In this document: piece by piece, positions 495 to 41,525 of the stretch | Layout: every line of letters begins with the position of its first letter | How positions within the stretch are numbered: position 1 is the first letter of the stretch | Assembly: GCF_003918875.1 (NCBI RefSeq) | Contig: NW_025766956.1 | Location: 310,001-374,000 of the forward strand | Length of the DNA: 64,000 bases | Origin: Haliotis rubra | Taxonomy: Eukaryota | Direction: 5' to 3' | Notes under the pieces: model-generated | What the model saw: the letters and a program-made list of their open reading frames with translations, nothing else | What the model was told of the DNA's origin: nothing | Databases searched by the model: none | Position numbers and translations under genes: made by a program

Positions 495-524
495 CTCATC
501 TTTTTTCTCTGCAACTTCTTCTCC
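495..524 (-). CDS. SH3BGR: SH3BGR tail microexon GEEVAEKKDE (duplicate)
   Basis: TAG|30 nt|GTACTT; identical to 2149-2178. Confidence 0.78.
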
Positions 525-3500
525 CTAACAACATATTAATTGATCTCAGTCGTTGGAGGGTTAAATCATTTAATGTTACTCAAAGCATACTGAAGGTGAT
601 CATATTGAAAACTCTAACTGCCCTGACTAAATGGTAACTTAAATACATGTACTTATAGCACATTTGACCAAAATAATGCATAATTGTTAACTTTCATGTG
701 GTCAAATTCAATTGTTACAGCCAATCTGACATGGCAATATTAAATATCTGAAGAATATCTGACATTGACAGCAAGGTAGACAGATCTGATATGCAGAATC
801 TTTGTAAATTCAAATGACTGTCAATGATTTGATGGACCTAAACAAGTTCTTTTCACTGATTTGTAATCTCAACAAAGAAGAAAAATACCTTTTCCTCTTT
901 TTCTTCATTTTCTTCCTCCTAACAAAATAATATGAGAATTTGTCTGCACATTGTTACAAGATGTCATTCAACATTCCAGTACTGTACTAGATTTAAGCAA
1001 CAGCTCATTCATTTTCAAAACACGGTATCATATATAAGTGTGTATACATAGTTTGTTCTTCCATACCAAAATGTTATTAAAATTATTTGACATGTTGAAA
1101 CTGTTATTACAATGAAATATAATGCACTGTTTACTCATTCATATAATTGTAATATTTTCATCAAGCATTTTTGAATATGAAGATATCTCACACACGCACA
1201 CACACTTTTGGATATGCCCCAACATCTTCAAGAACATACAACTACGGCATATTACCGTAGATAAGCCGACTCCCAAACTTGACCCTTAAAATCAGTGTCA
1301 AAATGGTATGTTTTGTACATAAGCCGATCCCCCGCGATGGGGTCCTATTTTACTGATGACTGCGTCAGAATTCATACTTTTATATTATTGTGCATGTTTG
1401 AACTTGATCGCCGGAAACGTGCGCACAGCTGATTGCTATTTCCAGCTCAAATACACATGGTAATCTTAATCCCTGCAAATAATACAATGCCCAGCAAAAA
1501 CAACTTAGAACTTAAAAGGTAAATAATCTTGTCTAGTGATGTTTAATTGCAAATTTGACGTCTTTACTGACAAAGTCGTCTTCTGTTGTTTGTTCACGCG
1601 AAGTGATACAATGTTGTTTTCTTACCCCCGGAAAAAAGTTTGACGAAAGCATAACCTATAGATAAGCCGACCCCCTTCTAAAGACTGCTTTTTTGGGGCC
1701 TCAAAATTCAGCTTATCTACGGCAATATACAGTTATCAGCGTCATCTTTCACAACTGTCCAAATCATACAGCTTACTTCTACCACTGTATAAGCATTTTC
1801 CATTTCTTACTGAACATACTGAGAATCAGATCTTCTTGTTAACATATTACTAGCTACCAATATCATGGGTGTTGGTTGTGGTGGCAAGCAAGTGAATTGG
1901 GGCTTAAGCTAGTTTACCATTATGGTGGGGGGACACTAAGAATGAAGTTCACACTTCCTACCAATGAAGGGAATCAAATGTTGGCCTGCAGTCTGATAAG
2001 CCAACTCTTTATAAACACTTGCCTACTCTACCACCCAGGTTCAGAAATAAATGGAGAATGTGCATTACAAAGGTGAGAGACATGCTCCAATTATACAGAT
2101 TCGTCTAATTGCAACTATGAGGTGGGTATATCAAACCAACACAAGTACCTCATCTTTTTTCTCTGCAACTTCTTCTCCCTAACAACATATTAATTGATCT
2201 CAGTCAATGGAGGGTTAAATCATTTAATGTTACTCAAAGCATACTGAAGGTGATCATATTGAAAACTCTAACTGCCCTGACTAAATGGTAACTTAAATAC
2301 ATGTACTTATAGCACATTTGACCAAAATAATGCATAATTGTTAACTTTCATGTGGTCAAATTCAATTGTTACAGCCAATCTGACATGGCAATATTAAATA
2401 TCTGAAGAATATCTGACATTGACAGCAAGGTAGACAGATCTGATATGCAGAATCTTTGTAAATTCAAATGACTGTCAATGATTTGATGGACCTAAACAAG
2501 TTCTTTTCACTGATTTGTAATCTCAACAAAGGAGAAAAATACCTTTTCCTTTTCCTCTTTTTCTTCATTTTCTTCCTCCTAACAAAATAATATGAGAATT
2601 TGTCTGCACATTGTTACAAGATGTCATTTAACATTCCAGTACTCTACCAGATTTAACCTACCTCACACACAGATTAATGCAAGAAATTAGTATAATCCAA
2701 ATGTCCTTTTTATCTACAATGTCAATCCTATTTGCCTGTTTAGTACCTCACTCAGCAAGATTCCAGCCATATAGATAATCTGTGGATAGGAGAATCTGAA
2801 CCAGACTTTCCAAGGTCAGTTTTGTGACCAGCGATCCACATCATTGTGATACAAGGATATGCTATCAACCATGTAATGAGTCTGAGCACCCAATACATTT
2901 GTCAATTGGTCGCTGGCACCTATTCTAACCCGAAATCACCATGTGGCGTGTCCATTCCAATCACCTTGAAACATCTGGAATTATCAATTTGGTCAAAAGT
3001 CATCTACACTATCATTAAATGAGAGTTTATACTTTCACTGTTTTGTAAGGGCAACATGCACAGGGCTTGGATCTAGAGATACCTTCTCCGCCTTTTCTTC
3101 CTCAGCTTCCTCCTAACAAAACAACCATAAACAAGATCACAAAAATGGTTATTTGTTATGACTAAAAAAAAAATTAAATAATGTCAGAGTTACACTGGGT
3201 GTTTAGGTCTATGTTATAATTGTAAAATGATACAAAAATCCTTCCTTGCCTTTCACTGTGCATAGATTGCACTTGTTTCATAAATGATGTATTTATGATC
3301 ACTGTGTCACTGGATAACGAAATTGTATTTCAAGTTAACATATTTCTTGAAGTTACGAGCTTGTTACATATTCTTTCCAATTTTCTAGTCTAGTCGAGTT
3401 TATAAGCGATTTGGGAGAGCTAGATAACAATTTAAAGAAGAGAGATGCAACACTCAGTAAACACAGTAACAATTACATGTATCTTACACAGGGTGAAGTA

Positions 3501-5378
3501 GAGAATATGCCACCTACATATTTGTACATGATCACTGCATCCAATTATGTCATCTGTATGAAACAGTGTTCGAAATAGCCACTGGCCAGCTAGTCTGTGG
3601 CTAGTAAAAATCTAGTCGCACCAGTAAATCTTCACAGTTACTGGCCTGACGGGCTAGTGAATTTTCATGTGGTCATATTGTAAATATATCACACTCTCTG
3701 ACTTGTTAAGTTATAACACACTTTTACATCATGCAACATTATGGCCTGATTAAAATGTTCATCATATTATCAGCTTATTGATGAAACCCGTGTCTACATT
3801 CAAATTTTGGGCTAGTGAATTGTTTTGTGGGCTAATGACTTTCAGACATAGCCGGCCCGACTGGCTAGTAAGATTTGGAAACTATTTCGCACACTGGTAT
3901 GAAATACATGAGCACATAAGGAGGAGTTCTTTGAGGTGTGTTACTTCTTTCCTGATATAAACCTACATTTAGAAACATGATACTCGTTGGAAGGAAACCA
4001 AGCAGCATGTTTTCCTATTTTATAATGGACATTAGATATTAATATATCACAAATCCCATTTGAACACACCATATTTCTATCTATCTTGATGACATATCAC
4101 ATATGAACATGAACAACGACATTACAACCAGAGTGAAAGTAAGTGTAATGACAGTTACACTTAAATATTGGACGTGGTACTGACACACAGGAATGGGCAG
4201 CTTGCAAAAATCAGAACAAATACCTTATCCTTTTTCTCTTCCTCGTCGTCTCCCTAGCAACATAATCAATACTTAAGAGTAACGTGATATTATGGAAAAT
4301 TTACATGTGACTAATCAACATGTGCATCTTAAATAGAAAGAAAATATTATGAAGCTTACAGCATGTCATAAAAGTTTCTCAAAATACATTTAGTACACCA
4401 TATATGAAAATGGTTTAGTGAAATATCTAATTCTAACCATATAAAATGACTGTATGAAAATATTATACTATTACAAAGGTCAAACAGACTTCACATATAT
4501 ATGTTTCACCTCAATATGCATCTTTGATGCAGAAACATGATCAACAGGTCAAATATAATGAGGAAGTCACACAATAAGAAGACTAATGGAAATTTTGGGG
4601 ATTTGGGGATTTCTGAAAAATATATACCGGGGTAGTTATTTTAAAAAATTCACATCAGCTGGGGACTGTTGGGATTTGACTATTGGTATCTGCAATTACC
4701 CTTGCAAACCATGCACAATGTTTAACATGCTCAAAATTGAAATATTGGGATTTATCAGCTGAATTACTTGTACATGTATTATCATGAGTTCATGTCATTG
4801 AGACTTAGGGCATGCTTGCAGCATGTGGCATCTAATTCTATCTGCTAAGAAGGAAATCAAAACCACTGCAACAAAAATACCTCTTTCTTTTCCTTTTCTT
4901 CTTCTTCTCCCTAATAACAAAGTTTTTCAAGACAATCAAATATCAATTATATCTATAAACTGAATTATTTTATAGAAAAAACACTTCATTAAAAACAGAA
5001 GGTTTTGTATAGTATCTGCACATATCTTCCAAACCACACATAGCCAAATACTGGTAGCCCATATAGACTTTCATCAATTTAATTCATTTATTATGTATAG
5101 GTGGCTGTATCAGATAATACTTTATAGAAAAAGATATATATCAAGGTCAGTTTACAAATATCCAAGTATGGCTAAATTTGTTGAGCTGTTGCAAGACGAA
5201 CGTGCTGGAGTTATACTTAATTTGTCAAAGTTTGTGTATACTTAAGGAGAAAGCAACAGTTGAATTTGTTTGAATCTTTATGTATCTTATGGGTCTGCCA
5301 CCATGAGGGGATGGGAGTAGGCAGGGTGAGAAATGTTATGCACATGTGCACGTTAAATTATTATTGAATGTAAAATAA

Positions 5379-5425
<47 letters not shown>

Positions 5426-8400
5426 ATAATGGGTTGGGGGTTGGTAATGTGGTTGTCAGGATGTTTGATGTCCCATCCCAGGCATCAGTTTCAAAGAGAT
5501 ATTTAAATAAAATGAATTTATAAGAAAACTCTAACAAATAATAAAAGTCAATAGAAATCTATATTTGGTATTATTTATCAAGTTACAATGGCAAACTATG
5601 GATGAACTAACTGCAAGATGAAATCAATTACTAATTTATGGCTTTTCAATGTTACTTTTAATATTTTCTATATTTTAATTAATCTATTTTAAAATGAATA
5701 ATTACCGTGCACAAAGGCACAGCCAATAATGCTGCATGGACATTATCATATAAAAACTCTAATAACAGTCCATGTAATCGTAAAATTTCCTAAAGTCTCT
5801 CTTGGCCAAACCATTACAACTTACGGTCAGTCTGTTACGTCTTCAACTGATTTGGAACGAGATCATCAAATAGGTGACATCATTCTACTTTCGGAAATAT
5901 GTATAGCAGAGACCGAACGTAAAAGCGATTAAACACCAAGTAAGACGTGACATTAAATTACACGGATGTAGACCACCAAATACCATGTGCAGGAACATGC
6001 CTGCATAAGTATTTTCGAATATTCCTTTATATTTTAGTAGACTTAACAGTCTCTGAATCAACAACACATTTTCTGATGATGTAAACACCTGTACATTGTG
6101 GGACAATTCGAGACGATCACTGGAGCGAACTATAATTCCCATCAAAAGTTTAGACTCACTGAAAACACTCACTATACGTTATGTATATATATATGGTTAC
6201 ATCGAAGATTGATTTCTCCACTAACTTGGGGCAACCAAATGCAAACCTTATGCAGATGAATTTCACAAGGATCAGGCATCAAATTGCTGAAAAGCATGTG
6301 CAAATATCATGCATGTGAACAGCGGCATTTTGTTGTAAAGTTTTGTTAAGAATTCGCCAATTTTCACTGAGTTTATCATTTCTTGAACTCATGACATTAA
6401 TCTTTTAAACTGTACGAATTTGTTTTACAATACATCAGTTCATGTGTAAACAGTACCTTTAAAACAATATGGAATATTTTGCAAACTTTAGTTTAGAACA
6501 GTTGCCTGAAGTAAGCTGCTATATTTACACTACTGAGTCTAAACTTTTGATGGGGAGTATATAACTGTTAAATATTACGATGATAAATATAAATGACCTT
6601 TTAACTGCAATATACATAGTTTTTACACAAAAGACTTGACGTAATGATATATAATCATGTCTTGAACATTTATAATACATGAAAACGATCTCTGGAATGT
6701 GAGCGCGAGAAAACAAAGCTCTCGATCATTTACGACCAAAGCTGACTATTACAGTGGCTAAAAAGACATTAGTATACAATGTTTCCATACACAATTCCGT
6801 ATACAGCAGGCACATTGTTTGTTTATGCCTGATAACACACGTAAATAATGGCACCAGGTTAGAGGGAGTTTTGTAATTTGTATATTGAATATCTTATGTA
6901 TGAACACAGCAATAAAGAATATCAACATGTCAGATGATACAAGGTTAACAAATTTCTGATAAGTAGGGTTTTCAATAAAGTACCGGTAGGCAGGTACATA
7001 TTAATCTCTTATTATTGCAAGGGCAGATCAACAGTACATGGTATTCATCCTGAACAGAATCATTGCAATAACTACAAGTTATTATTACTAATTATGGGCT
7101 TTTAGATTGTCTATATGCTATGATATTAAAATCATGTACCCGGTAAATTGCACCTGAATTTAGTCATTGTTCTATTTAACGGTCATGAGGATATACACCA
7201 GTACCTTTCAGGTGTAATTTGTGATTTAGTTTCTGTTTATATTTGTAGACTTATCTCTGTCATCAATGATCATCAAGAATGTTATGGCCAAGGTATGTAT
7301 GTAGGTATGCAGAAAACACACTGTTCATCACAACTATGCCTTGTCAATGTACAGGTATGGTCTATCATCAAGAACTATAACAAACTGATAACATACACCA
7401 CACGGTGACACGCAAGGACATTCCATTTAAAAGTTTTAGGAATGACATGCACTTAAGTATAAGGGACACAAGGGCTATCAAAAGGTTTACACTGAAAAAC
7501 GATACTTTCAATTTACAGAAACTTGACGTTTCAGAACAATAACATAAACAAAACATGTTTCATAGTTTGATCTTACTTCAGTAGGAAAATACTGATCTAA
7601 GACGAACTGGAGAGATCAATCTCATTGAATGACTCAACTAGTAAACCCCAATTAGGATCTTATTCAATAATTTACCATTCAAAAAGAATATATTTACAGC
7701 ATTTATGCATGTAAGACTTGCGTTAAAGGTAGTTGTAATCGTTGGACTTATCATGCTGATAAACTTTCTTCATGTTACATGACATAATCATCTGACTTTG
7801 TTCAAACTTCAAGGTATATCCAAGAAACACTAACAGAGGACTGTAACCTCTCTGCATGCAATGAAGGCACTGTGTATGTCCTGATAGAAAAAAAGTGGGT
7901 CACTCTCACACACAAAACAAATACCTCTTCCGTTTTTCCTTCTACTTCTTTTTCCTAAACATAACAATAACAGACTCAACTTAAACATCAAATTAATAAA
8001 TTTTCACAATGATTTACAGACAGAAAGTATAACAGTGACAAAATTCTCTTTAATACTTTTTGAAATATCGTCAAATTTAATGTAAAGCTGTTTGAGAGTT
8101 ACCATATCACAAGACAATTGTATATAGAAATTACCAGTCTAACCATCTGATCATACTGACTTGACATACCTTAGGCTTTCTCATTCATTCACATATTTCT
8201 GTTCACATTCATGTCTTAACATAACGGCAGTTTGTGACAGGAACCTGTCAAATGTCTTGAAAATAGGAACCTGTCAGAAGCCCGAGTTGTAAGCTTAGTT
8301 ACTTATCATTCAAATGTCTTGAAAATATGGTCGAGCCAAGTTCTGGCAAGTAGACTGAAAGGTTTTGAGAATAGACTGCATTTCTCAAAGTTTAAGGCTG

Positions 8401-11400
8401 CTGAGCTGCACATGATAGTCATAGAAAACAAAAAATATTTGAACATATATCAGCTAATACAATCTAACTGAACATAATTAGTCAACTCAGGTCAGTTATG
8501 CAGGAAGGGGACCACAACAACAACAACAACAACAATACCTCATCCTTCTTCTCCACCTCCTCCTCGTCCTGGTAACACAAGCATCAACACCATCATACTT
8601 TTGCATGTTATGCTATCATTTTTAATGCTGCACTCAGCAATATTTCAGCTATATGACTGATGTCTGTAAATAACTGAGTCTGGACCCGACATCATCAGCT
8701 ATGCAGAAGGGATCTTCTAACATGTATCAAACTAGTTAGCAAGTCTCGATCCCATGACAAGCATGAGTTGATGAAGTCCAACACTACTTTGTGGCTGCAA
8801 AAGCAGGAGACTTTGATGGTGGGAGAATGCGGTAGAAAGTCAGTAATATTCCAGCTATGTCAGAGTGGCCTAAAGGCTCTGATGACAACCAATCAGTCAT
8901 TACCCACTGAAGTGACTCTGTGAGTCAGTTGAGTTTATTGCTCCCTTGAACAGTATTTCAGTTATATCACAGGATGTTATTTGATGTGGGGGAAAGTTCG
9001 AATTAGTGCATCACTTTGGTAAACCCATGAGTTGTTGAAACCATCAGCACAAATTGCAAATTTGAACACATGATCACAAGTTCCTCCACAGTGAATAGAA
9101 GATCCTAAAGGACTGGGCTTACTGTTTAGCCATCTTTATTTACGTAAAAGTATAAGGTATCCTTTTTGCAGCTACTACTGCTGTAAATCACTGAAACCAC
9201 TGCTCCATCAATATGTTAAAAAAAGGGTCTGACTAATGCTTAGTCTCTGAAAATAGAAAATTTTAATAAAAACAACCAACTCCATTTATAATGAAAAGAT
9301 CCAAGGGGACAAGCAACCTCAGGAAAAATCTAAGACTTCATTTTGTGCTATAGCATTAGAGTAATGACTGAGCACAACTGAAAATATTTTGCTTGAGGGA
9401 CTGTATGACAGACTATAATACCTCATGCATTTGGAGAACGCAGTGAAATCATTCAGATGTCAGATATGTCATCTCCCAGCATGCCTTGCTGACAGTGAAA
9501 ATGTGAGTGAGTTTCCAAGTTATCATGTCTCGACATAGCAGTACCATATACAAAATATATTAATACAGTCTTATAATGAAGTTCGTATTTATTTGACACA
9601 ATTAGTCACTTTTCGTTCCTGGAAATGAACAACATGTATAGTTATTGTTTGAGAAAACTGTATTATAGATGAAGGAATTCTTCAACAATATCAAACAATG
9701 GTCTGGGAGATAAAGTGATCTCACAAACCTTTACAATGACAAACAAAGTGAAGACAACCTACAAAATACAGTGTCATCATTAACATGATTAAGTCTGATA
9801 TAAGTGATTGTGTGTGAAAACAAAAAACATTGCATCAACAGACATCACAAGGTACATTGATGCATGTGACATTAAATCTGTTAACAGCTGTGAATATCTA
9901 TAAATGACCTTTCAATAGAAAAGTAAATACCTCTATCTGTGCTTGAGATACTTCAATTTTGTCAGCCATCTTCAGAAATGCATATATATTGTTTGTCTCC
10001 ACAGCCTCATAAAATTGATCATAGCCCTGCAAAAAAAGGAAAGCACTGAAACATTTTTCATACATGTACATGTAGAAGCAGTATGTACATGTTATTGTTA
10101 ACCTTCCATTGTTCTGTGTTCCTATTCACAACATACTTGTCAAAAGTTAGGTAGGAGAGAATATTAGTTATTCTAAGATGCCTAGCGGTTAGAACAATCG
10201 AAAAAAAAATACATTATCAGACAATAAAGGTATAGTTTTTTGATGACGTAACAATTGAATGACGTTGTCCCGTCACTGCGCCATTCTAGTCTGCCCCCTC
10301 GTAATCGAATTATTTTACATTACGTCACAATGTAAGTGACGTCACGATGCATGTCAGTTGTCATCGCCTCGTACGGCCTCCTACAGTAAACTACTCCGTT
10401 GCATCCCGTTCCTTGGTTTGCATTTGCTTCACGCAGCTAACATCACTGGTGGAAACATTACGTTTATGTTTTACGACGGGTTAAAATGTGTCAATTCGAC
10501 TCACAAGTTTTCAGCGACACGGTAGCGTTAGCAATGTTTACATACCCACAATGCAATCGTGGAATGTCGCTTTGACTACTCAGAATATTAGAACCCTAAT
10601 GCTTAGTCTAATCTTTGGTAAGGTAGGATTGAATATTAACCCTAATTATCAATAAAATAGTTTTAAAAGAGTAAAACAATACTTTATCAAGTTTATTAAC
10701 ATGTTATTGATAAACCTTCCATTTTCATAATTATAACCTAAATAAGATGGAATAATCAGAATATAGTAGTACTTAATCATGTATATATTAATATGTTACT
10801 AATAAACATTTTTTCTACAATTTTCATAATTTCTTATAGAGCACTTAAAACAGTTGAGTTTACAATAGAAATGTCTCTTGGCCTTACAGTGTATTGTTAT
10901 TTCATTTGTCTTGTCATGTAAATGAAAGGGAGATCCCTTTTAATATATCTGCCATCCATATCCGTGACAAGGCTGGTAGAAAGAATTTGATACTGTCCAT
11001 TAAGTTGAACACCTAGTCTTACAACTGGATTCCTAAATGATTCCCTTGTATACTCATACAACTGACCCACTAAAGCAGAATTCAGATCAGATCAGTCTCT
11101 AGGATATTTATCCAATATGTCCAGGAGATATTTCTGAAATGTGGTTATGAAACAGAAGAATGTGCCATGAAATGTCTTAAAAAGATATGAAAATGTCTTT
11201 TATATTCCATTTCTATCCCAAAACATCACCAGGGAAGCCAGTAGCACAGTGTACCCCTTTTCTTATAACTAGTCAACAGGACTAGTGGAAACCACGTTTC
11301 CCCATTCCTCAGAGTTTGTAGGTAATCCTTATTGAATGAAACAAATATCATGTTTACTATGTTCACATTTTCTACAATATGTTCTACTTCCAAGTTGACA

Positions 11401-14400
11401 CAAATTTGAGAATGGCTCAAGAATTATAGTCTGTACACAGAGGTAAATCCAAGTAGTAAATGAGGACAACAATCACTGGAGTATTTCTTGGCCCCCAGCA
11501 TAATTTAGTGGTTTTAGGCCATAGGACTCATATGAAAGTTCAAAGTGAACTCCATTAATTTTTAAAGTCTTAATGACTTACACCACAGTACTGATCATCA
11601 CTGAATATCTGTGGAGGCAAAGGGTGCTTCATTCCTTCCCTTGGTTCTGCATTTGCTCTCATAAACTTCCTGTCTTCTTCTCGGTTGGGGTCAGAGATGT
11701 CAACTGTCTCCATGGGTATGCTCATACTGGACAGAATGTCTGTCACATGCAGCATCTCTTTCTTAAGCTGAAAAAAGCAACAATGGCAACATTTAACACC
11801 TGTAACTCTTACAAGCATATAACACTGAAAAACACAGAGCAAAGAACATTTATGATGATGTATTTCAAGGCAATGAGTCCCCATGCTAAAGGTGACTATC
11901 AGGGACATAGAAATGAATGCATGTGTAAAATGTTGTGAGTCTGCCTGGCTAAACGTACTGAACTCATCTGTTGGTAACATTTTCTAACAGCTCTGAATGT
12001 TACCATATTAGTATGAAACATGCCACTTGTCTGAATCCCAAGTCTGGAAACTTTCTGTTTGGTCCAGTGAGCAAAGTTAACAGCATTGAATTTTCCATAT
12101 TTATAACATAAAAATCTACTGACCAGTTGTGGCTCTGGGCTGTAATATACTTATTCAAAGTCTAGTCGACATGTGTACACTCTCACAATACCCAGCATGC
12201 ATTTTCCACTACTACTATTAATTGACCCTGTACTCCAATTGTCATCCTATATCCAGCATGTATGTATTCTTTATAATTGCACTATGTTGTATTATGGGCC
12301 AAGGGCCTACATTACTGAAATAAAATGTCTGTCTGTCTGTCAAAGTCTAGTAATATTTCAATAGTATGTCCAAAAAGCTCAATTAATAATCGTGATTAAT
12401 GTTGATATAAATACACCATCTTCTACTGAAAATGGTGGTCACAGCTCAGAACCATGTTTTCTCTGTAGACTTCAACATGGACTGTTATCATGATTATGAG
12501 CTATTTTTTGACAATATTAGCAAGAATTAAAAAAATTCAATCAAATGAGGCTTCAGACAAGTGGCTAAAGTCACTAACTGGAAATATTTTATATTAAATA
12601 TCTGGCCAAGCATCATCATAATTAGGGTTAGACATGGCCAAATGTCCATTTGTCAGAGGTAACAATCTGGAATGAATAGTTGTTATCTCCCCAAATCCAG
12701 TTATTTTCCATAACAGCTAGTCCTGAATGATTTGCAGACTAGCTGAATATGAGAAATGGTTTCTAACTTACTACCCCTGATCAATGCTCAGAATTTGAGT
12801 ATATCTAATGGTTCACATACATGTCATAACAAGGACCCCTTGACTTTCATTTGAACACAGTTAAACAACAACATGCCCTTCAATCCCTAGCCAGTGGTCT
12901 GCATGTGGTGTAACAAATTTCCAATTTATCACATTTGTGAGCTGCTTTCACTTCTTTAATACCTCTTTTAATAGTAACCATGCAAATTATAGAAGGTGCA
13001 TTAAATACAGAACCAGCAAAATAACCTTTAAACATATGTTCTTTTTTCTGTATAAAATGAAGCTTCATGTGTAGAGTTTGTACCTTGCAATGATCACTTG
13101 TGACATACGATGCAGGATAGTGGTACCAGGAAGGAGCAACATGTTCATCTGACTTTTGAGTGAGTAAATTAATGTTGCTTCATACCTAAGCCTACATCTT
13201 ATACAAATATTAATAATAACCATAAAATGTAAAATATATCAGTGCATCCACGGGGACTCAGAAAAAGTGTAAATACTTTTTGTAAAAATTCCAATCAAGT
13301 GACAATACGTTATCACTGAGTTTGCTACTAGCTGGGTTATGGTATTATTTGCAATTTAATTACTGTAACAATGTGATGATCATGATACACAATAAAATAA
13401 CAGAATTAATAATAATATTTAGGTGTCTGGGACCCCCATTTTGTTGTCCAGGACCCCTGGAAATTAAGAGTATGAGTCCCAGGGACCCTCAAATTCAGGA
13501 CTCCGTGTAAAACGATGAATCAGTTAGCTATTCATTAATCCTGAATTAATGCCCCTACAGAAGTCAACTACTAGAACTGTTGCCAGCTTCGATAAGCCTT
13601 TAAAATTCAGCCTCATAACAGAAAACTCCATGTGTTGGGCATTTTGATGTGGCACATTACTTCTGATTACTAAAATGTCCAAGACCAACTCAGGCACATA
13701 TTGCTGTTAATCCTTGATTCATTGAGTGATTTACCCTTCATTTTGTTATGAATCACCATCGAGAGTTAGAGCACCAAGTATTAGCTTGAAGTTTGGTAGG
13801 CTTTTATGAGACACCTTGTTGATTCAAGCTGGTGTGGACACAAGATTTACACTGTTTACTATGTCCTGACTGAAAACATTCCTTGAAATGTTTTGGGAAG
13901 GTGTCACTTTCTAAAACAGGTTGTCATATTTTTTAATGTGCTGCTTTTAATTCACATTTCAAATTCGGTTTACCTCAATAAATGTAACACAAATCAAGAA
14001 ATAGCTCTGTAAGCAAAAGTAGACATGAATTAAGGGCTATTTCAAAATTGTTTCCTTACATAGACAGCAACATACACTTGCACTGTTTACCATGTTACCA
14101 ACGTCATAAAGATATCACTGACACCAATCATTATTCGTTCATTTAGATTTGTGACACCGTGATTATTGATGAGTGCAAACACAAGATCTAACTTTCAAGC
14201 AGAAGTCAAACTAAAGGTGAAAGTTTTGGTTATGGTCAAACAGTCACATAATGTAAGAAACTCAATAAACAACGCTCAAAGTTTAGGTTCAACGACTCAG
14301 CAGTTTCCAAACTTTTGTAAACAAACATTGTCTGGTGTCATTTTGACATAGCGAAATAAACGAGTGGGTGTGGCTAGTTTTGTTGACATATTTACCTGCG

Positions 14401-14440: not shown

Positions 14441-14479
14441 CTTGTCAAAAATTTGCAAGTTTACTGGATCGAAGAAGAA

Positions 14480-14800
14480 AGTCAAATGATCAAGGGATAA
14501 TGAGCACCACCCGAAATTCCTCGATGATTCCGATTATGGACAGATTAGAGGCTGTAATCCGAAACTACCCCAAACATCCGAGACTTTCCAGGCTTCTGCT
14601 TCCCGTGACGTCACAGGAAATGAAGCAACGTAGAACGCATGAGATTGAACGCATAAACCCATGACGTCACATCATACCAGCAAAGTTGTTGCCTTGTTGC
14701 TTGGCAGATAAATAACAAAGTGCATACCGGTGTGCACGTTGATAGAAGTTTTCTGTCAACCTACTCTTATCGGATTCATGAAAGATGTACCTTCTTGGTA
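14480..14800. promoter_or_regulatory. Putative bidirectional promoter between SH3BGR and LCA5
   Basis: CpG-richer patch just upstream of the SH3BGR ATG; two full CRE palindromes TGACGTCA (14606-14613, 14662-14669); X-box-like GTTGCTTGGCAGA (14696-14708); plus-strand donor GTAAGG at 14798 that could end a non-coding LCA5 first exon. Confidence 0.55.
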
Positions 14801-19316: not shown

Positions 19317-19930
19317 AGATTGTATGACAAAACACATCTGACGCATAAATATAATACACAAGCATGAATCCATTTTCATTTTGTTGTTTCTTTACAAATT
19401 TCATCCATTAACCAATTCCAAGCCCCTAACTGACCAAAACCGTAAGTTAATTTAACTTAAATTCAGGAACTTGGCTCTCAAGTAGAGTGTAACAATACAG
19501 CAAAACAGTGTTTCATAGGTTAATGTTTGTAGTTTCCCGACAGTATCACATCTTTGCCGTCTGAAGTTTGTAATTCACCTGTGAAAAGGGAGAGAATATG
19601 AACTTATGAAATAGAAATACTGTATTGGAATACACATTGTATCGTTACACTCTTGTGCTCAGGCTTGTTGTTCACAGTAGGAATCACTGGATTGTCTGGA
19701 TCATGCTTGATTATTTACAGGTCACCGACATTTTGCTGTAGTGTAGCATTAAACAGCAAACAAGCAAACATTTTATTTAGTCTGTAAAGCATTATTTTTT
19801 CCATTTTTTTTTCCTTGCAGTGCAAGTCTGATAGTGGTTGTGTGGCATCACACTCAGCTTGAAATAGTGGCCAGCCAATGGGAGACAGGTGACAGTAAAG
19901 GGAGGCAACCAGGCAACACCAGCACCAGCT

Positions 19931-25900: not shown

Positions 25901-28249
25901 AGACAAGGACAACCTGGAGACCAAACTGAAAGTAGGGGCACCAATAGGACATCACAGAGCCAGGCTCATAGACATTACAGGTTGACGCTCATGGGAGGGT
26001 TACCACATACTGTGACATAGACATTATAGGGCCAGGCTCAAGAGAGGGTCACTTTATGGACATTATAGGGCCACAGTGAAGGAAATGTTTACACAATGTC
26101 TGAGTGTTTGATCCAGGTTGTAGACATTTCACTGTGGTGAAACCCATGATAAAGGGTATGGTGGTAACAAACCTGGAAACATAATGAAACCAATATCAGA
26201 ACCCATTGTAATACTTTTGTGGTTTTCCTGAGGGACTAAGGGATGCAACTCTGTCAATTTTCAGTTGGTTTGTGTGCTCACAGTTTGACTGTTGGTTGTT
26301 ACAGGAGAAGGAGAAGGAACTGGATATCAAGAACATATACAGTAACCGCGTGATGCGTGCCCCCCACAAGCTGCCTGCATCCTACGGGGGCACACCCCTA
26401 GACACACCTCCTCCTCCACGCAGGAGAGTGCCCTCTGTCGGAGAGATGACGGCTAGGGAGAAGGCCCGAATGTTTGAAATGAAGCGGAGGGAAGAGGCAA
26501 AGAAGGTGGGTCACCTACAGGGGATTGTTTTACCAGGCAGTTCTAATATTACTGGCCTAGACTTTGTTAAGTTATGTGGCGTAGCACAATAATTGCTTTG
26601 TTTAAATTAATCCCATGCTTCAGAACAATGAGGAGATAAGCATGTTGTGGTTTTAATGTAGCATTCTGTTGCCTGGTGATTGGATGAAATATTGAAACAA
26701 AGATGCAGTTTAGGTTTTCAAATGATAAATCTAGTAATGTCTAATCTACATCTACCATAGTTCTACATCAAGGACACAATATGTTCACCTCATTTCTACC
26801 ATGACCTATTTATGATGGGCTTAAGTATTCTGGCAGTTTGGTTATGAGCAGGGAATGTCAGTAGGAACATTTCTTGGAAGTGGGAATGCCATCTCCAAGT
26901 GCTGGAGGGTATCCTGTCAACTCTTAGTTGAATGTTCTTCTAAAGTTTAGACTCCAAACTTTTATATATTACAAGGGAACCCATTACAAGTCAGCCTTTG
27001 GGTCATCATCATTGTAAAAAGTACCAATTCTGTGATGTGGAGAAAGTCTTATGTAAAATGTATATCTCAATGACATTGTTGGTATTTCAGAACAAACCTA
27101 AACCTAAGCCCAAACAGGATGTGTTTGAAAACCGCTGGAACAAGGAAGGTGAGGAAAGGGATCGACTGGCAATGGAGGAGAAGGAGAGACGAGACCTGGA
27201 GAATAAGTACCTGCAGGCCAGGGAGGAAGAGGAGAGGAAGAGAGAGTGGCAGAGAGAGTTGGAGATGCAGCAGGATCAGGAACGACAGTTCGAGCAAGAA
27301 CAGGAGGACCTGCGGAGAGAACGTCAACGCATGAAGAGAGAGTCAGAAGACCTTCAGAGACGGGAGGCCAACAGGCAAAGAGAACAGCGTGAAAGGGAGG
27401 AGAGGGAGAGAAAGGAACAGGAGGACCGAGACCGCCAGTGAAAGAGATGAAAGGGACAGAATCGAGAGAGAAAATAGACTTAGGCGAGAGCTTAAAGAGA
27501 GAGAAGAAGAAATGGAAAGTCAGGCCCAAGCAGAGCGTGAGAGACTGGACAATGACCCTCGTGTGTTGGAGGAACGTAGGAAAAAGGAACTGCTGCTAGC
27601 CAGGTTGAAGGCTATAGATGATGGGTCAAAGGAAAATGTGAGCCCAGTTAATCACTCTCCCTATGGAGATGACAGCTCAACTCCTATAAGTAGAAAGAGT
27701 TACTCGTTTTCCAAGCCTACCGAGAATTTACATAATGGCAAGCCAGCATATGAGGAAGTGAGCGTTCCGTACATAGACAGGAGGAAACAGCAGCGGGCCC
27801 AAGAGGAGGATGCAGCTGGGTATAACCCATCATTTGCCAGGAGGTCAAGTGGCACCTCCAGCAAGAAGTTGGGCATCAACGAATCTCCCTCCAGGAAACC
27901 CAACAAAAAGTCTGCCCTAATGGATGAACTGTTTGGAAATCAGAGTGGAACCAATAAAAAAGATGACGATCTGTTCCAAACCATAGACTCAAGAAAACAG
28001 ACTACTAAGCGTTCGTCTGGCTTCCCTTGGGATGAAGACAGTACAAGTACGGCTACGGCATCCCGGCCACGGGAGAACTCTAGCACATTGTTTGGAGGTG
28101 GTGCTGCTCTTGTAGAGGATGATGGACCCTCAGATAAATCCAAACTGTTACCACGGCGACAGAGACACCAGTCCAGCACATTTAGTTCCAAACCTGCAGT
28201 GAGCGCAATTGACACATTTGAGGATGATATAGAGGAAGTCATGTTGTAG
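19931..28249 (+). CDS. LCA5: Lebercilin (LCA5/LCA5L family ciliary coiled-coil protein), with an apparent frameshift at ~27439
   Basis: Exons 19931-20024, 24861-25381, 25794-25931, 26305-26505 and 27091-28249, all GT-AG with compatible phases. Lebercilin motifs: QRMLSAGRIKINEL.N, ENKLLK..Q.RHEKAL.KYE, EKEKELDIKNIYSNR, KKSALMDELFG and C-terminal EDDIEEV. Possible extra exons 22450-22748 and 24495-24507. Confidence 0.9.
22450..22748 (+). CDS. Candidate alternative LCA5 exon (Ser-rich)
   Basis: TACAG acceptor in phase 1 (matches the upstream exon), open 299 nt, strong GTAAGT donor at 22749. Confidence 0.5.
23267..23501 (+). mobile_element. SINE-like retroposon (family B, structured non-tRNA head)
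   Basis: 11-bp TSD TCTTTCTGATT (23256-23266, 23502-23512), (AAAC)n tail, homologous to 50071-50314 and 58348-58559. Confidence 0.85.
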
Positions 28250-33500: not shown

Positions 33501-33625
33501 CTGTAACACACTCATGAAAACAGCAACCAGTAATTCTTCAATATGAATCTAACGACAGAAAAAATTTAAACTTACAACATTTTGCTTCTTTGAGTGTCAT
33601 TTTGGAAGTTGGGGATTACAATACT

Positions 33626-35687: not shown

Positions 35688-38600
35688 TCACACCCCTATC
35701 AGTCTTCGAGCTCGGAACACCACGGTGCTGCAGACCAATACCCAGCAGGCTATGCCAACCCCGCCTGGAAACAAATAACAGAATACCTGCACTCAAAGTT
35801 TCCTTAGAATAATTTCATTGTTGATTTCAAGCTTTGAACAATGGAAGAAGTTGGGTTTAACACTTATTTGAATAATATTCTGGTGTGCCAAAGGGAGGTG
35901 ACTCTGCACAGGGAATTGTGGCAGCATGGACAACTGCACCACTGGTGTCCCTCTGAACAATAGAGGGGTAGAAATGACATCTTCACTGAAAAGAATCATC
36001 TTGGCAAAATGGTCCTTAATCTTCCTTTAAAGGGGAAACAAAGCTTTACTGTCTAGTAAAAGAATTCATGAATGATGGATGTACAACAGACAACAACTCA
36101 AGACAAACACTATAATTTTTAGTATAACTAAGAGAATCAGCGAGAATCAAACCTGGAATTCCTGTAGGGAAGGCGACAATTCGACTGAAGGGGAAGAAAT
36201 ATGAGGATGGCAGCTCTAGTAAAGGCTCATTTCGGTACGTCAAGACCAGACTTAACATTGTCAGAGCCTGAAACATACATATAGCACTCCCTGAAACATT
36301 TATATGCACGAACAATACTGCCAATGGTCCGAACATGCTAAGAGACAAGGATAGTACTCACTAACACATATATATTATTTCGTACAATATTCAGACTGTG
36401 ACAGATAATTTCAGGCATATTTAAAGAGTCTTATTTAAAATGTGACAGAAACATGACACAGTATATCAAATCAGATAACTGATACGATAGAAAAAGAAAT
36501 CTACTTGATTATATGACAAGGTCTGTGGATATTGGCTCTTGGACATGTGTGAAACAGTGCATAAATATTCAACATGTATATATATCAGCAGCTGATATTA
36601 TGTCCATCAGTTAATATGGCATAATTGATGCATAAATATTCAACATGCATATATATATCAGCAGCTGACAAAAATGTACATTAGCCCATAATCAATTGCA
36701 TGAATTGTTTACTCACATGAACAACATGGATGGCCATCTTGATGCCCACTTTCAACATGGTCAAACGCTGGGATCTTGAGCTTCCTGAATTAGAAGATGG
36801 CAGGATAATGTTATCACTTATCAAGAGCCTAGTGTCCATCAGTTAATATGGTATAATGGATGCATTAATATTGTAAACAATATTGCTTTCAGATCAGCAT
36901 ATGTTTAACATGATAATCATGATAATGATATAACATGGATAAATAACATAACTTAGTTAAATTTTCATTTATCAAATATTACATAAGTTATATGTGTATG
37001 GTAAAAATATATGAAAGGTACAACCACACTTTACATGTCTTATTCATCTTCACATATTTCTGTAATATTGATCTACCTAGTTGCTTAAGCTGCCCCATGA
37101 TCTTGTCAATTTTGCGTTGTATCTTCATGTAACGTGCAAACTCGTCAGCCATATTCACAGACTCCTGGTCCGACTTGAGGTCCCTGACTTGTGACCTGAG
37201 ATCTAGTTCCTCATTGCTCAGTCTAAACACCTTTTTCCCAATCTACAACAAAACATAAACAGATTGTGACAGGAAAAAAGTATAAACATGTACAACATAA
37301 TCTAAGAACAAGCTGTAAAGATAATAATGCTGAAACATTATCTTCTTCATGATGTTACACACAGCAAGTGGTTGCATAATGGCTCCCCATGTCAACCACA
37401 AACAACTAAAACTGGGTTTCGTAAAAGTGTAATGTGCCAATACCTTTTAGTTTTCATTTTAACATACCCAAAACAAAAAATCTTTTACGATCTTTATCCA
37501 TTTATTTTGGGAATGTGATGTTACTAAGAACTTTGGGGATAAAGTTTTGAAATGGATAGACCAGTGTGGTCGTGTATGCAATATGAAGCTAAGTGCTAGA
37601 TGTATACTATGTGTAGTTCATGAAAACATAATAACAGACAAGGTTTTTTATTTCATTTTGCTTTTTCAAGAATTTTTGCATTTACAAATGCAAATTTCAA
37701 AACTTATTTTAGTAGATTTGTACAGGAAATGAACATGAGATACAATATAGAAAAGGACATAGCTTTTAGAAACAGTGATCAACATAAGTTCTAACAGGCT
37801 TGAATGTTGTATCATGTACTTTTGCATCATTGAGCAATAATCAAGATCATTAAATATATATTTAACATGTGATATCTGAGGCCAGCTGATTCCTATCGAA
37901 GTTGTGTGTAAATGTAGGTGTGTAAGTATGTGAATGAGTGTTTGTCCTAATTGAAAAACCTTCTTCCTCTGTACATCCTTTAAACACCCATGTAAACACA
38001 ATATTAAATGAACTTCATGCTGTGGAACTCACATTACTCTGGGTGTGAGCTAACCCATATGCAACAGGAAGGGTGAAATAAAATATGTACAACCAAAAAA
38101 GCATCATATTTTTCTATATTATATTTTGAAACACTGCAAACCAGTTTCGGCTTCACAGGGTTGATTCCAGGTCCATGTTAATAATGAAATCACTTGCTAT
38201 TTCTCTATCTCACAATGAAATATGTATCACACTACATGTGACTACAGTAAATATAATAATGATTAATGACACACACTACATACTTCATTGTGATAGGAAT
38301 TGTTTTAACTCGAGCGTGTGTGCAAACGATAATTTCTACTTCAGTCTTCCACTTTAGCCATGTCATCATGACTGACTTCTGAGTCCAAGATCCGCGGACA
38401 TCACCAACCCAGGTCCAATCATCAGCTACGACGTTGTGGACCTATTCACCAATGTACCACGGGATGAAGCCCTTCAAGCACTACGTCACAGCCTCTCAAC
38501 ACCAGCCTCTCTACCGACTCTATCATCAGCCTCACCTCCGCCTGCATCAACTCCACCTACTTCACCTGGGGCGATGCCATCTATGAGCAAATCCACGGAC

Positions 38601-41525
38601 TTCCCATGGGCTCCCCACTATCCCCCATCCTAACAGAAATTTACATGGCCGACCTCGAAGAGAAGGCCCTAGAAACTGCACCCTTCAAACCGCCCTGCTG
38701 GTACCAAGTAAAGTGGATGACACCTTCGCCGCCCTCCAACCTCAGCAAGATCCAAAGCAGCTCCTCGCCCATCTCAACAGCCAACATCCCCCCCGCATCA
38801 AATTCACCATTGAAACAGAGCAGAACAACCAACTACCTTTCCTTGATGTCCTTGTGTCCCGCGACCTCCTGCAACCAACTCCAGACCTCCGTGTACAGAA
38901 AACCAACTCATACGGATCAATACATCCACTACAACTCCAACCACCCACCTAAAGTCAAGACGGCGCCATCTCTACATTGACCAGAAGAGCCAAAAACATC
39001 TGCTCAACAAACCTACAGGAAGAAATTGAACACCTGAGGAAAGTCTTTGTGGAACGCAACCACTACCCACCTGAAATAGTCAACAGAACCATCGGCAACG
39101 CTTTCACCTCCTGCCAAAAGGTCTAAACCAGAATCAGCCCCCATCAAGATATCCATTCCCTACATTGGTAAACCATCACACCAAATCAGCCGACTCCTGA
39201 AACAACAGGCAGGAATAGACACTACCTTCTCAGCGCCCTCCAGCCTCAACAACCTCCTCCATGCCAACGGAGAAAACAACCCACCACAACAACAACAACC
39301 CGAAATGTGTTATTTACAAAATAGACTGTGATTGTGGACAATGCTACATAGGTGAAACATCCCACCCATCAACACCCGAAGTCAAAGAACATCGCGCACC
39401 TCGGTTGCTAATTCCGACACCAAATCAGCTATCTCTGACCACATCAAAGCCAACCCCAATCATCAAATAGAGTGGTCCGACATCACCATTCTCGCCAACA
39501 ACCAAACGGACTTCACTAAACGCAAGCTCACAGAAGCCATTCACATCAAACGCCACAAGCCTACTACATCAACCGCGTGACCAAGGATACTTCATTCCAT
39601 CTGCTTATGATCCACTCCTCCACCAAGCCCAGTCTATTGTATAAACATCGCATCCAGTGTATAAACATCTCATTGTAACTACATCTCTGGCTTCCACTCA
39701 CTATCCTTTATGTACTTACTGGCTTCATCAGCTTACTGCTTAGCCAATCATGGCAATTATGTTGTTTCCTTTGTCTATTATGTTGTTTCATTGTTATATA
39801 CAGTATATATATGCAGCTCCTACACTTCATGTATCACTCTTGCTTGACAACGGTACAAGAATCTGTATCGAAACGTCGCACTCACCAAAATAAAGAAGTT
39901 GTTATCCATAAAACTTGTTATATATTGTACGTCTCAACTTCTAAAATGCCACTCAAACAAGTTAAGAACAAGCTGTAAAGATAATAATGCTGAAACATTA
40001 TCTTCTTCATGATGTTACACACAGCAAGTGGTTGCATAATGGCTCCCCATGTCAACAACAAACAACTAAAACTGGGTTTCGTAAAAGTGTAATGTGCCAA
40101 TACCTTTTAGTTTTCATTTTAACATACCCGAAACAAAACATCTTTTACGATCTTTATCCATTTATTTTGGGAATGTGATGTTACTAAGAACTTTGGTGAT
40201 AAAGTTTTGAAATGGATAGACCAGTGTGGTCATGTATGCAATATGAAGCTAAGTGCTAGATGTATACTATGTGGAGTTCATGAAAACATAATAACAGACA
40301 AGGTTTTTTATTTCATTTTGCTTTTCGCAATTTTTTGCATTTACAAATGCAAATTTCAAAACTTATTTTAGTAGATTTGTAAAGGAAATGAACATGAGAT
40401 ACAATATAGAAAAGGACATAGCTTTTAGAAACAGTGATCAACATAAGTTCTAACAGGCTTGAATGTTGTATCATGTACTTTTTGCATCATTGAGCAATAA
40501 TCAAGATCATTAAATATATATTTAACATGTGATACGAGGCCAGCAGATTCCTATCGAGTTGTGTGTAAATGTAGGTGTGTAAGTATGTGAATGAGTGTTT
40601 GTCCTAATTGAAAAAACCTTCTTCCTCTGTACATCCTTTAAACACCCATGTAAACACAATATGAAATGAACTTCATGCTGTGGAACTCACATTACTCTGG
40701 GTGTGAGCTATCCCATATGCAATAGGGAAGGGTGAAATAAAATATGTACAACCAAAAAAAGCATCATATTTTTCTATATTATATTTTGAAACACTGCAAA
40801 CCAGTTTCGGCTTCACAGGGTTAATTCAAGGTCCATGTTAATAATGAAATCACTTGCTATTTCTCTATCTCACAATGAAATATGTATCACACTACATGTG
40901 ACTACAGTAAATATAATAATGATTAATGACACATCAGCTACATACTTCATTGTGATAGGAATTGTTTTAACTCGAGCGTGTGTGCAAACGATAATTACTA
41001 CTTCAGTCTTCCACTTTAGCCATGTCATCATGAAGTGAAAGAAGGCAAACATCTGTTGAGTTGATTGAAAACGTTTCAGCTCAGACTTAGCCGAGAGCCG
41101 CGATGCGGTCCTACACAGTCAAGGCTAGCTCAGACTCAGAGTCAGAGTTCATACCCGGGGTGTTTCATCGTGCCACAAAGAGGAGCAAGCAAAATGAGAT
41201 CTTAGTTGTTTGATACAAAATGTACCCATAGTAGAATAACTCGTCTCTGTAATACATTTTCACGAATAATATACAGTCTGGCTGAGTCTGTGGTTGTTTT
41301 TATCTTCTTCTAGTCTTCATGAACGAAAAGTGAACAAATGGATCGTGTGACTTGTTGAGACAGTAACTGTTGAGTAGGAAGTGTCTCCTCAAATAACACT
41401 TTTAAAGAACATAACATTCACAGATGGTTCCAGAAACAACTTACCAAACCTGCAACAAGATGTGAATATTTCGGCAAAATAGAAAACAGAACCACAAAGA
41501 GAAAGATCAGGAGCATTAAAAGCAT
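35688..41525 (-). CDS. GET1: Guided entry of tail-anchored proteins factor 1 (WRB/CHD5), 168 aa
   Basis: Exons 41525-41445, 37242-37077, 36784-36717, 36267-36153 and 35764-35688 (81+166+68+115+77 nt), GT-AG and phase-compatible. N-terminal TM segment, coiled coil with VNMADEFARYMKIQRKIDK, then AFPTG.PGGVGI.CW motifs typical of WRB. Confidence 0.95.
37303..38371. repeat. Direct repeat copy 1 (~1.07 kb) left of the Penelope element
   Basis: Near-identical to 39963-41033. Confidence 0.93.
38372..39962 (+). mobile_element. 5'-truncated Penelope-like retroelement (RT plus GIY-YIG endonuclease, frameshifted) with 3' pLTR
   Basis: Motifs across frames: SYDVVDLFTNVP, GLPMGSPLSPIL, VDDTF, TIETE.NNQLPFLDV, VYRKPTHTDQY, VIYKIDCDCGQCYIGET, SAISDH, RKLTEAIHI. 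Antisense within GET1 intron 1. Confidence 0.93.
39841..39880 (+). ncRNA. Minimal type I hammerhead ribozyme motif, C3U/G8A variant, in the Penelope pLTR
   Basis: TGC-TTGACAA-C-GGTACA-agaatc-TGTATC-GAAAC-GTC-GCA. Confidence 0.65.
39963..41033. repeat. Direct repeat copy 2 (~1.07 kb) right of the Penelope element
   Basis: Near-identical to 37303-38371. Confidence 0.93.
41088..41127. mobile_element. 40-bp miniature insertion with TAGCC...GGCTA ends (Academ-like)
   Basis: Perfect 9-bp flanking duplication GCTCAGACT at 41079-41087 and 41128-41136; second copy at 53004-53043. Confidence 0.7.

What the first reader, a model, noticed from the sequence alone, without database searches (positions are those of the whole stretch)
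495..41525. SH3BGR-LCA5-WRB/GET1 block with the same order and orientation as human chr21q22
Seen: SH3BGR (minus) is head-to-head with lebercilin (plus), which is tail-to-tail with GET1 (minus). Known, from memory: human 21q22.2 has GET1(WRB)-LCA5L-SH3BGR in this arrangement, LCA5 and SH3BGRL2 are neighbours on 6q14, and a GET1-SH3BGR read-through transcript is annotated in human. Inference: a three-gene microsynteny kept since the bilaterian ancestor, which suggests shared cis-regulation. A GET1-to-SH3BGR read-through is geometrically possible here too.
Basis: partly seen in the sequence, partly recalled or inferred. Interest (0 to 1): 0.7.

Follow-up and report, generated by a model that had tools for sequence, protein, structure and literature searches.

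The report
Ancient SH3BGR-LCA5-GET1 gene neighbourhood, already catalogued
Three unrelated genes (SH3BGR-like, the ciliary gene lebercilin/LCA5, and the membrane-insertion gene GET1/WRB) sit in this mollusc in the order and orientation reported for human chromosome 21; the neighbourhood dates to early bilaterian animals, but a 2022 synteny survey already lists it.

Summary
Observation confirmed. The window holds an SH3BGRL-type gene (minus strand, 495-14598), the genome's only lebercilin/LCA5 gene (plus, 14688-28249) and its only GET1/WRB gene (minus, 35688-41525), all with canonical splice sites.

Interpretation supported.
- Patella vulgata has the same three genes in the same order and orientation.
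- SH3BGR and LCA5 lie head-to-head in an annelid (Owenia) and a hemichordate (Saccoglossus).
- LCA5 and GET1 lie tail-to-tail in amphioxus.
- Robert et al. 2022 (PMC8851819, supplementary file 4) list SH3BGR, LCA5 and the WRB orthogroup as consecutive Lingula genes in block 5970, "Bilateria novel".
- The block is broken or not visible within 10 kb in a sea urchin, a cricket, a ray and a lamprey.

New here:
- Spliced RNA contigs put SH3BGR exon 1 and a non-coding LCA5 exon 1 at most 89 bp apart. They diverge from a CpG-rich promoter holding two TGACGTCA palindromes.
- APEX1 lies divergent from GET1, as in amphioxus.

The GET1-to-SH3BGR read-through was not tested directly. SH3BGR mRNA contigs start at the gene's own exon 1. 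The classical junction would hit a stop codon after one codon.

This is a real, ancient, ordinary microsyntenic block that is already catalogued. The scan's notes cover this genome only, so nothing can be said about earlier sightings on other DNA.

The parts
495..8568 (-). SH3BGR-like gene: array of nine microexons of 30-36 nt, rich in E and K, that encode the tail (8568-8539, 7954-7925, 4910-4881, 4253-4224, 3112-3083, 2578-2543, 2178-2149, 918-889, 524-495). The last one still ends in a GT donor.
Evidence: Script scan for AG/GT-flanked E/K/D-rich exons.
9952..10026 (-). SH3BGR-like exon 3, the C-terminal part of the thioredoxin-like domain.
11582..11767 (-). SH3BGR-like exon 2, the core of the PF04908 domain.
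   Evidence: Pfam E 4e-14. Best solved-structure matches are SH3BGRL and SH3BGRL2. Splice sites.
14396..14598 (-). SH3BGR-like exon 1: 5'UTR, ATG at 14440, 15 codons.
   Evidence: RNA contigs of four runs end at the donor 14396 and reach 14570-14598. Sequence.
14599..14687 (.). Shared divergent promoter gap of at most 89 bp. CpG observed/expected is about 0.9. It holds two TGACGTCA palindromes, at 14606-14613 and 14662-14669.
14688..14848 (+). LCA5 non-coding exon 1, with donors at 14797 or 14848.
   Evidence: Two GT..AG joints, 14797>19821 and 14848>19821, in RNA contigs of runs X2 and X3.
19821..20024 (+). LCA5 exon 2, with ATG at 19931.
   Evidence: contigs and joints. (Haliotis lebercilin-like residues 11-33)..
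24861..25381 (+). LCA5 exon 3: lebercilin domain, profile positions 1-141.
   Evidence: Pfam E 1e-40. 87% identity to Haliotis cracherodii lebercilin-like.
25794..26505 (+). LCA5 exons 4 (25794-25931) and 5 (26305-26505).
27091..28249 (+). LCA5 last exon, stop at 28247-28249. An apparent change of reading frame lies near 27437-27441 in an E/R-rich stretch.
35688..36784 (-). GET1/WRB exons 3 (36784-36717), 4 (36267-36153) and 5 (35764-35688, with the stop).
   Evidence: tblastx against Patella and amphioxus. Splice sites and phases.
37077..37242 (-). GET1/WRB exon 2, the coiled-coil that binds TRC40/GET3 in the solved human complexes.
   Evidence: Pfam CHD5 E 6e-14. Human WRB/GET1 chains 6so5 and 8cqz, E about 1e-8.
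41445..41525 (-). GET1/WRB exon 1, with ATG at 41525 and the first transmembrane helix.
55458..63524 (+). APEX1 (AP endonuclease) exons, divergent from GET1. The gene runs off the window. It probably extends the ancestral block by a fourth gene.
   Evidence: Solved-structure search: APE1 residues 162-219, E 7e-15. Exon-like frames. Amphioxus GET1/Exo_endo_phos head-to-head. Acanthaster Rrp1 beside WRB.

Best explanation
This is a genuine ancestral bilaterian microsyntenic block. It consists of an SH3BGRL-type gene, the single LCA5 gene and the single GET1 gene, and in invertebrates probably APEX1 next to GET1.

Shown: in this mollusc SH3BGR and LCA5 are transcribed in opposite directions from one short CpG-rich promoter. 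Their first exons lie at most 89 bp apart.

Inferred: such a shared promoter cannot be split by a rearrangement without damaging both genes. That is the most likely reason the pair survives in molluscs, annelids, hemichordates and, from papers plus memory, twice in vertebrates (SH3BGR/LCA5L at 21q22 and SH3BGRL2/LCA5 at 6q14).

The LCA5-GET1 tail-to-tail link has no demonstrated mechanism. It is looser, being kept in molluscs, brachiopod, amphioxus and human but lost in echinoderms. Compactness plus slow rearrangement is the likeliest reason for it.
For: - Domains and orthology. Copy number in the genome. LCA5 tree: the window groups with Haliotis inside the invertebrate LCA5 clade.
- Same block of three in Patella.
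- SH3BGR(-)/LCA5(+) head-to-head in Saccoglossus (1 kb gap, SH3BGRL-type) and Owenia.
- LCA5(+)/GET1(-) tail-to-tail in Branchiostoma, 2.2 kb apart, with GET1 0.4 kb from an Exo_endo_phos gene.
- Published catalogue: block 5970, 'Bilateria novel', with Lingula SH3BGR, LCA5 and WRB-orthogroup gene models g12645-g12647 (methods).
- Bidirectional promoter: RNA contigs of four runs, local rise in CpG observed/expected, and two TGACGTCA sites in the gap out of 8 in the 64-kb window.
- Human: WRB, LCA5L and SH3BGR share a TAD and an eQTL. LCA5 and SH3BGRL2 are the only genes in 0.21-0.24 Mb duplications at 6q14.1.
Against: - The linkage is not universal. There is no SH3BGR or GET1 within 10 kb of LCA5 in Diadema, Gryllus, Mobula (LCA5L) or Lethenteron.
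- Amphioxus has a PLA2 gene, not SH3BGR, upstream of LCA5.
- No GET1 is seen within 10 kb in Owenia or Saccoglossus.
- The look-ups reach only 10 kb beyond each gene, so a missing neighbour there is weak evidence.
- Contig ends are not mapped transcription starts.
- The runs are RNA only by inference from their spliced joints.
- Human gene orientation rests on my memory plus the existence of the WRB-SH3BGR read-through.
- TGACGTCA contains CpG, so it is expected to be enriched in any CpG-rich promoter.
Confidence: 0.8

Rival explanations
1. Neutral retention. The three genes stay together only because molluscs, brachiopods, annelids, hemichordates and amphioxus rearrange slowly and the block is small. 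No functional constraint acts on the order.
For: The block is broken in echinoderms and not seen in a cricket. Robert et al. report that lophotrochozoans keep 93% of bilaterian-novel blocks while vertebrates lost 84%. No mechanism is evident for the tail-to-tail LCA5-GET1 pair.
Against: The SH3BGR/LCA5 first exons are at most 89 bp apart, so separating them cannot be neutral. In human both copies from the vertebrate genome duplications keep the pair, even though most such blocks were lost.
Confidence: 0.25
2. A conjoined-gene constraint. A GET1-to-SH3BGR read-through transcript, as validated in human, is ancestral. It keeps the two genes on one strand with LCA5 antisense between them.
For: GET1 lies upstream of SH3BGR on the same strand. 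Human WRB exon 4 to SH3BGR exon 3 chimeras have been validated.
Against: SH3BGR mRNA contigs in four runs terminate at the gene's own exon 1 near 14570-14598. The classical junction joins the GET1 exon 4 donor (phase 1) to the SH3BGR exon 2 acceptor (phase 0), and it reads one codon and then a stop. Only the GET1 exon 1 or exon 3 donors would be in frame. The junction itself was not examined, and contigs drop rare isoforms.
Confidence: 0.06
3. A genomic regulatory block. Long-range enhancers of one gene sit in the introns of its neighbours and lock the order.
For: The human genes share a TAD and an eQTL.
Against: None of the three genes is a developmental regulator of the kind that anchors such blocks. 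The invertebrate blocks are compact: 2-7 kb intergenic gaps, and 0.09 kb at the promoter. No conserved non-coding elements were looked for.
Confidence: 0.08
4. Chance adjacency or mistaken orthology.
For: None beyond the short length of the SH3BGR and GET1 exons.
Against: Reciprocal best matches. Single-copy LCA5 and GET1. The same neighbours and orientations in four further phyla.
Confidence: 0.02

Closest known systems
Human 21q22.2 GET1(WRB)-LCA5L-SH3BGR locus
   Same: The same three gene families are immediate neighbours. They lie in one TAD and share an eQTL (PMC6088800). GET1 and SH3BGR are on one strand, as the validated WRB exon 4-SH3BGR exon 3 read-through implies (PMC4422297).
   Different: The human gene is LCA5L, one of two vertebrate paralogues, whereas the window holds the single unduplicated LCA5. 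Human orientation and promoter spacing come from memory and were not tested here. APEX1 is elsewhere in human (14q11, from memory). The two vertebrate look-ups (ray LCA5L, lamprey) showed no neighbour within 10 kb.
Human 6q14.1 LCA5-SH3BGRL2 pair
   Same: A second copy of the SH3BGR-type/LCA5 pair. They are the only two genes in recurrent 0.21-0.24 Mb duplications (PMC9276112).
   Different: No GET1 paralogue is there. The spacing is tens of kilobases (from memory), against at most 89 bp in the window.
Microsyntenic block 5970, 'Bilateria novel' (Robert et al. 2022, BMC Genomics, PMC8851819, supplementary file 4)
   Same: It lists consecutive Lingula gene models for SH3BGR, LCA5 and the WRB orthogroup. 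It also lists Acanthaster WRB next to Rrp1/APEX1. This is the same block, APEX1 extension included.
   Different: It is a catalogue entry only: no orientation, no promoter architecture, no discussion. The held copy of the file is truncated, so the full species list was not seen.
Head-to-head gene pairs with bidirectional promoters
   Same: Divergent first exons less than 1 kb apart, with a local CpG-rich interval.
   Different: Transcription starts are inferred from contig ends, not from CAGE. Co-expression was not measured.

Membership tests
Ancient (bilaterian) microsyntenic block, as defined by Robert et al. 2022 and Simakov et al. | [quoted passage not shown] | tested here: met
   The three genes are consecutive in the window and in Patella.
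Ancient (bilaterian) microsyntenic block | Present in both protostomes and deuterostomes. | tested here: met
   Mollusc and annelid. Hemichordate and cephalochordate for the two constituent pairs. Lingula and human from papers.
Ancient (bilaterian) microsyntenic block | Absent from non-bilaterian outgroups (the 'novel' label). | not tested
   No cnidarian, placozoan or sponge LCA5 locus could be fetched. This rests on the paper's label only.
Bidirectional-promoter gene pair | Divergent transcription with starts less than 1 kb apart. | tested here: met
   SH3BGR exon 1 contigs reach 14598. The LCA5 exon 1 contig starts at 14688 and is spliced GT..AG to 19821.
Bidirectional-promoter gene pair | Co-expression of the two genes. 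| not testable with these tools
   Only contigs were available, and their depth cannot rank expression.
Conjoined / read-through gene (GET1-SH3BGR) | Upstream and downstream genes on the same strand. | tested here: met
   GET1 at 41525-35688(-) and SH3BGR at 14598-495(-).
Conjoined / read-through gene (GET1-SH3BGR) | Chimeric RNA joining an exon of GET1 to an exon of SH3BGR. | not tested
It shows SH3BGR contigs ending at their own exon 1, but it does not cover the exon 2 acceptor.
Conjoined / read-through gene (GET1-SH3BGR) | Open reading frame across the classical junction (penultimate exon to second exon). | tested here: not met
   Phase 1 donor joined to phase 0 acceptor gives one codon and then a stop.
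SH3BGR / SH3BGRL / SH3BGRL2 clade (as opposed to SH3BGRL3) | Higher similarity to SH3BGRL and SH3BGRL2 than to SH3BGRL3, with a separate SH3BGRL3-type paralogue elsewhere in the genome. | tested here: met
   Tested on exon 2 only; no joined model was used.
Genomic regulatory block | A developmental regulator gene with conserved non-coding elements spread over bystander genes. | not tested
   No CNE search was done. None of the three genes is a known developmental regulator (established knowledge).

The most novel reading that the evidence does not exclude
The GET1-to-SH3BGR read-through transcript known from human is an ancestral bilaterian feature. Together with the bidirectional SH3BGR/LCA5 promoter that carries the TGACGTCA sites, it makes the block one co-regulated transcription unit rather than three independent genes.
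Probability: 0.06. Interest if true: 0.6.

Novelty: already known. Interest (0 to 1): 0.3.

Why it matters
The block illustrates how unrelated genes can stay neighbours for more than half a billion years. For one pair, this window gives a concrete and testable reason: a shared promoter of at most 89 bp. That could guide work on the regulation of human LCA5/LCA5L (retinal ciliopathy genes) and on the 21q22 eQTL that moves WRB, LCA5L and SH3BGR together. As a discovery it adds little. The neighbourhood is in the human annotation and in a published catalogue of bilaterian microsynteny, as one of hundreds of such blocks.

Tried and rejected
- The word search with the SH3BGR exon found nothing.
- Look-ups on ENA contigs (L007-L009) reached only LCA5 exons, because 10 kb flanks around one exon are too short.
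- Lingula P0042 and Saccoglossus P0077 isoforms are not on record. Saccoglossus was recovered through P0222.
- The ray, lamprey, cricket and sea-urchin loci show no neighbour within 10 kb. This is uninformative rather than negative.
- The gene downstream of LCA5 in Owenia (119 aa, minus strand) shows no GET1 similarity.
- The second 'lebercilin' hit in the genome is a 21-nt minisatellite, not a gene.
- The ORF 22458-22805 is not part of LCA5, judged by the Haliotis protein.
- An RFX X-box in the shared promoter was looked for and not found.
- The supplements of Irimia 2012 and Simakov 2015 are not held. Schmidbaur 2022 has no entry.
- No paper describing an LCA5L/SH3BGR bidirectional promoter was found.
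- tblastx of the amphioxus APEX1 5' part against the window gave nothing. APEX1 was confirmed through solved structures instead.
- Rfam and tRNA scans of the very deeply covered repeat at 19160-19240 were negative.
All searches were done exon by exon, by reference.
Full report
**What is in the window**

The window is G000:C2066:310001-374000 of a 1.38-Gb animal genome.

Pfam scans of single exon-bearing ORFs gave three hits:
- SH3BGR (PF04908, E 4e-14) at 11570-11980 on the minus strand.
- Lebercilin (PF15619, E 1e-40) at 24785-25408 on the plus strand, continuing at 25773-25985.
- CHD5/GET1 (PF04420, E 6e-14) at 36988-37230 on the minus strand.

Six-frame reading, splice signals and comparison with relatives gave complete coding maps.
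- SH3BGR: exon 1 is 14396-14598 (ATG 14440), exon 2 is 11582-11767, exon 3 is 9952-10026. Nine AG/GT-flanked microexons of 30-36 nt, rich in E and K, then run from 8568 to 495.
- LCA5: exon 1 is 14688-14797/14848 and non-coding. The remaining exons are 19821-20024 (ATG 19931), 24861-25381, 25794-25931, 26305-26505 and 27091-28249.
- GET1: the exons are 41525-41445, 37242-37077, 36784-36717, 36267-36153 and 35764-35688, giving 168 codons.

Position 495 is the last visible SH3BGR microexon, not the gene's end, because that microexon still carries a donor site.

Every search used one exon by reference.

**Orthology**

- The GET1 exon matches human WRB/GET1 chains (6so5, 8cqz, E about 1e-8).
- The window SH3BGR exon scores 34 bits against SH3BGRL and SH3BGRL2 but 18-24 bits against SH3BGRL3.
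- The only other SH3BGR-family locus in the genome (contig C713) gives the reverse pattern, 42 versus 20 bits. The window gene is therefore the unduplicated counterpart of vertebrate SH3BGR, SH3BGRL and SH3BGRL2.
- GET1 is single-copy.
- LCA5 is single-copy. The second, weak hit is a 21-nt minisatellite.
- A profile search found 646 lebercilin relatives. I used it because the word search cannot see full-length LCA5 from a single exon, and because the finding's own refutation test is absence of the linkage elsewhere.
- In a tree of the domain, the window exon is sister to Haliotis cracherodii lebercilin-like at 88% identity. It sits inside the invertebrate LCA5 group, apart from the vertebrate LCA5 and LCA5L clades. 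The host is thus a mollusc close to vetigastropods.

**Gene order in other animals**

Each look-up reaches 10 kb beyond the gene. Neighbours were confirmed by tblastn with single window exons.

| Species (group) | Arrangement found |
|---|---|
| Patella vulgata (mollusc) | SH3BGR(-), LCA5(+), GET1(-): same order and orientation |
| Saccoglossus kowalevskii (hemichordate) | SH3BGRL-type gene (-) ends 1 kb from the start of LCA5(+) |
| Owenia fusiformis (annelid) | SH3BGR(-) lies 6.3 kb upstream of LCA5(+); no GET1 within 10 kb downstream |
| Branchiostoma (amphioxus) | LCA5(+), then GET1(-) 2.2 kb downstream; GET1 is 0.4 kb head-to-head with an Exo_endo_phos (APEX1-like) gene; upstream of LCA5 is a PLA2 gene, not SH3BGR |
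| Diadema (sea urchin), Gryllus (cricket), Mobula LCA5L (ray), Lethenteron (lamprey) | Neither neighbour within 10 kb |

For the large vertebrate and cricket genomes, the missing neighbours say little.

**Literature**

- Robert et al. 2022 surveyed 49 animal genomes. They defined blocks as three or more orthologues with at most five intervening genes.
- Their supplementary file 4 lists block 5970, labelled 'Bilateria novel'. It holds consecutive Lingula anatina gene models g12645 (SH3BGR), g12646 (LCA5) and g12647, whose orthogroup OG0006768 is WRB in Acanthaster.
- The same block holds Acanthaster planci WRB beside Rrp1/APEX1. The held copy of the file is truncated.
- For human, WRB, LCA5L and SH3BGR lie in one TAD, and one eQTL raises all three.
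- LCA5 and SH3BGRL2 are the only genes in small duplications at 6q14.1.
- WRB exon 4 to SH3BGR exon 3 read-through RNAs have been validated.
- The exact human orientations and promoter spacing are from my memory.

**RNA evidence in this species**

Four runs of one study hold LCA5 exon words. Their contigs were laid on 14101-20100.
- In all four runs a long contig (488-2078 nt) ends exactly at the SH3BGR exon 1 donor (14396). These contigs reach 14570-14598.
- Two contigs join 14797 or 14848 to 19821 across a 5-kb GT..AG intron. This reveals a non-coding LCA5 exon 1 that starts at or before 14688.
- The joints show that the runs contain spliced RNA.
- The two genes therefore diverge from an interval of at most 89 bp.
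- That interval sits in the only CpG-rich patch of the region, with observed/expected 0.9 against 0-0.5 around it.
- It contains two of the eight TGACGTCA palindromes in the 64-kb window.
- The same octamer occurs in the SH3BGR-LCA5 intergenic DNA of Patella, Saccoglossus and Owenia. This is suggestive only, because the motif contains CpG.
- No RFX X-box was found.

**How it most likely works**

Shown:
- The three orthologues are adjacent in the stated orientation.
- The arrangement, or its two constituent pairs, occurs in both protostomes and deuterostomes.
- SH3BGR and LCA5 share a divergent promoter region here.

Inferred:
- The shared promoter is the constraint that keeps the SH3BGR/LCA5 pair together, including in both human paralogous regions.
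- The LCA5-GET1 convergent pair and the GET1-APEX1 divergent pair persist mainly through compactness and slow rearrangement. This fits their loss in echinoderms (LCA5 side) and in vertebrates (APEX1 side).

**Read-through**

- GET1 is upstream of SH3BGR on the same strand, so read-through is possible.
- The dominant SH3BGR transcripts start at the gene's own exon 1.
- The classical junction joins the GET1 exon 4 donor (phase 1) to the SH3BGR exon 2 acceptor (phase 0). It would read one codon and then a stop.
- All SH3BGR junctions are phase 0, so only the GET1 exon 1 or exon 3 donors would be in frame.
- The junction itself was not examined, and contigs drop rare isoforms.

**Verdict**

Interest is modest.

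Noticed in passing
window 55458-63524 (+), continuing past 64000: APEX1 (AP endonuclease) exons lie divergent from GET1, about 13 kb from its ATG. Amphioxus has GET1 0.4 kb head-to-head with an Exo_endo_phos gene. Acanthaster has WRB beside Rrp1/APEX1. The ancestral block therefore probably had four genes.
   Followed up: partly
window 27437-27441: The LCA5 reading frame changes inside an E/R-rich stretch. The next 269 codons in another frame are 86% identical to Haliotis lebercilin-like. This is probably an assembly indel and not a broken gene, but it is unresolved.
   Followed up: partly
window 19160-19240: A short dispersed repeat in LCA5 intron 1 carries summed RNA-contig depths of 56,000-86,000, with many loose ends. 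It has no Rfam or tRNA match. Related copies lie at about 57.2-57.4 kb and in L002.
   Followed up: partly
window 1-3300: A tandem duplication of about 1.65 kb repeats two SH3BGR microexons. 524-495 matches 2178-2149 exactly at the protein level, and 918-889 is close to 2578-2543.
   Followed up: no
window 46936-47943 (-): An intronless 335-aa ORF with ankyrin repeats and a SOCS box (ASB-like) lies between GET1 and APEX1. A Tc1/mariner transposase remnant sits beside it at 51.4-52.4 kb.
   Followed up: no
window 30000-30570: A minisatellite lies in the LCA5-GET1 intergenic region, with long repeat-generated ORFs on the minus strand.
   Followed up: no
window 42537-42563: Two further TGACGTCA palindromes lie 19 bp apart, about 1 kb upstream of the GET1 ATG and near the hammerhead-like element noted earlier by the scan.
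   Followed up: no
G000:C2467:1154745-1155152 (L004): A 21-nt minisatellite translates to a DEEIQTL repeat and gives a false lebercilin Pfam hit.
   Followed up: yes
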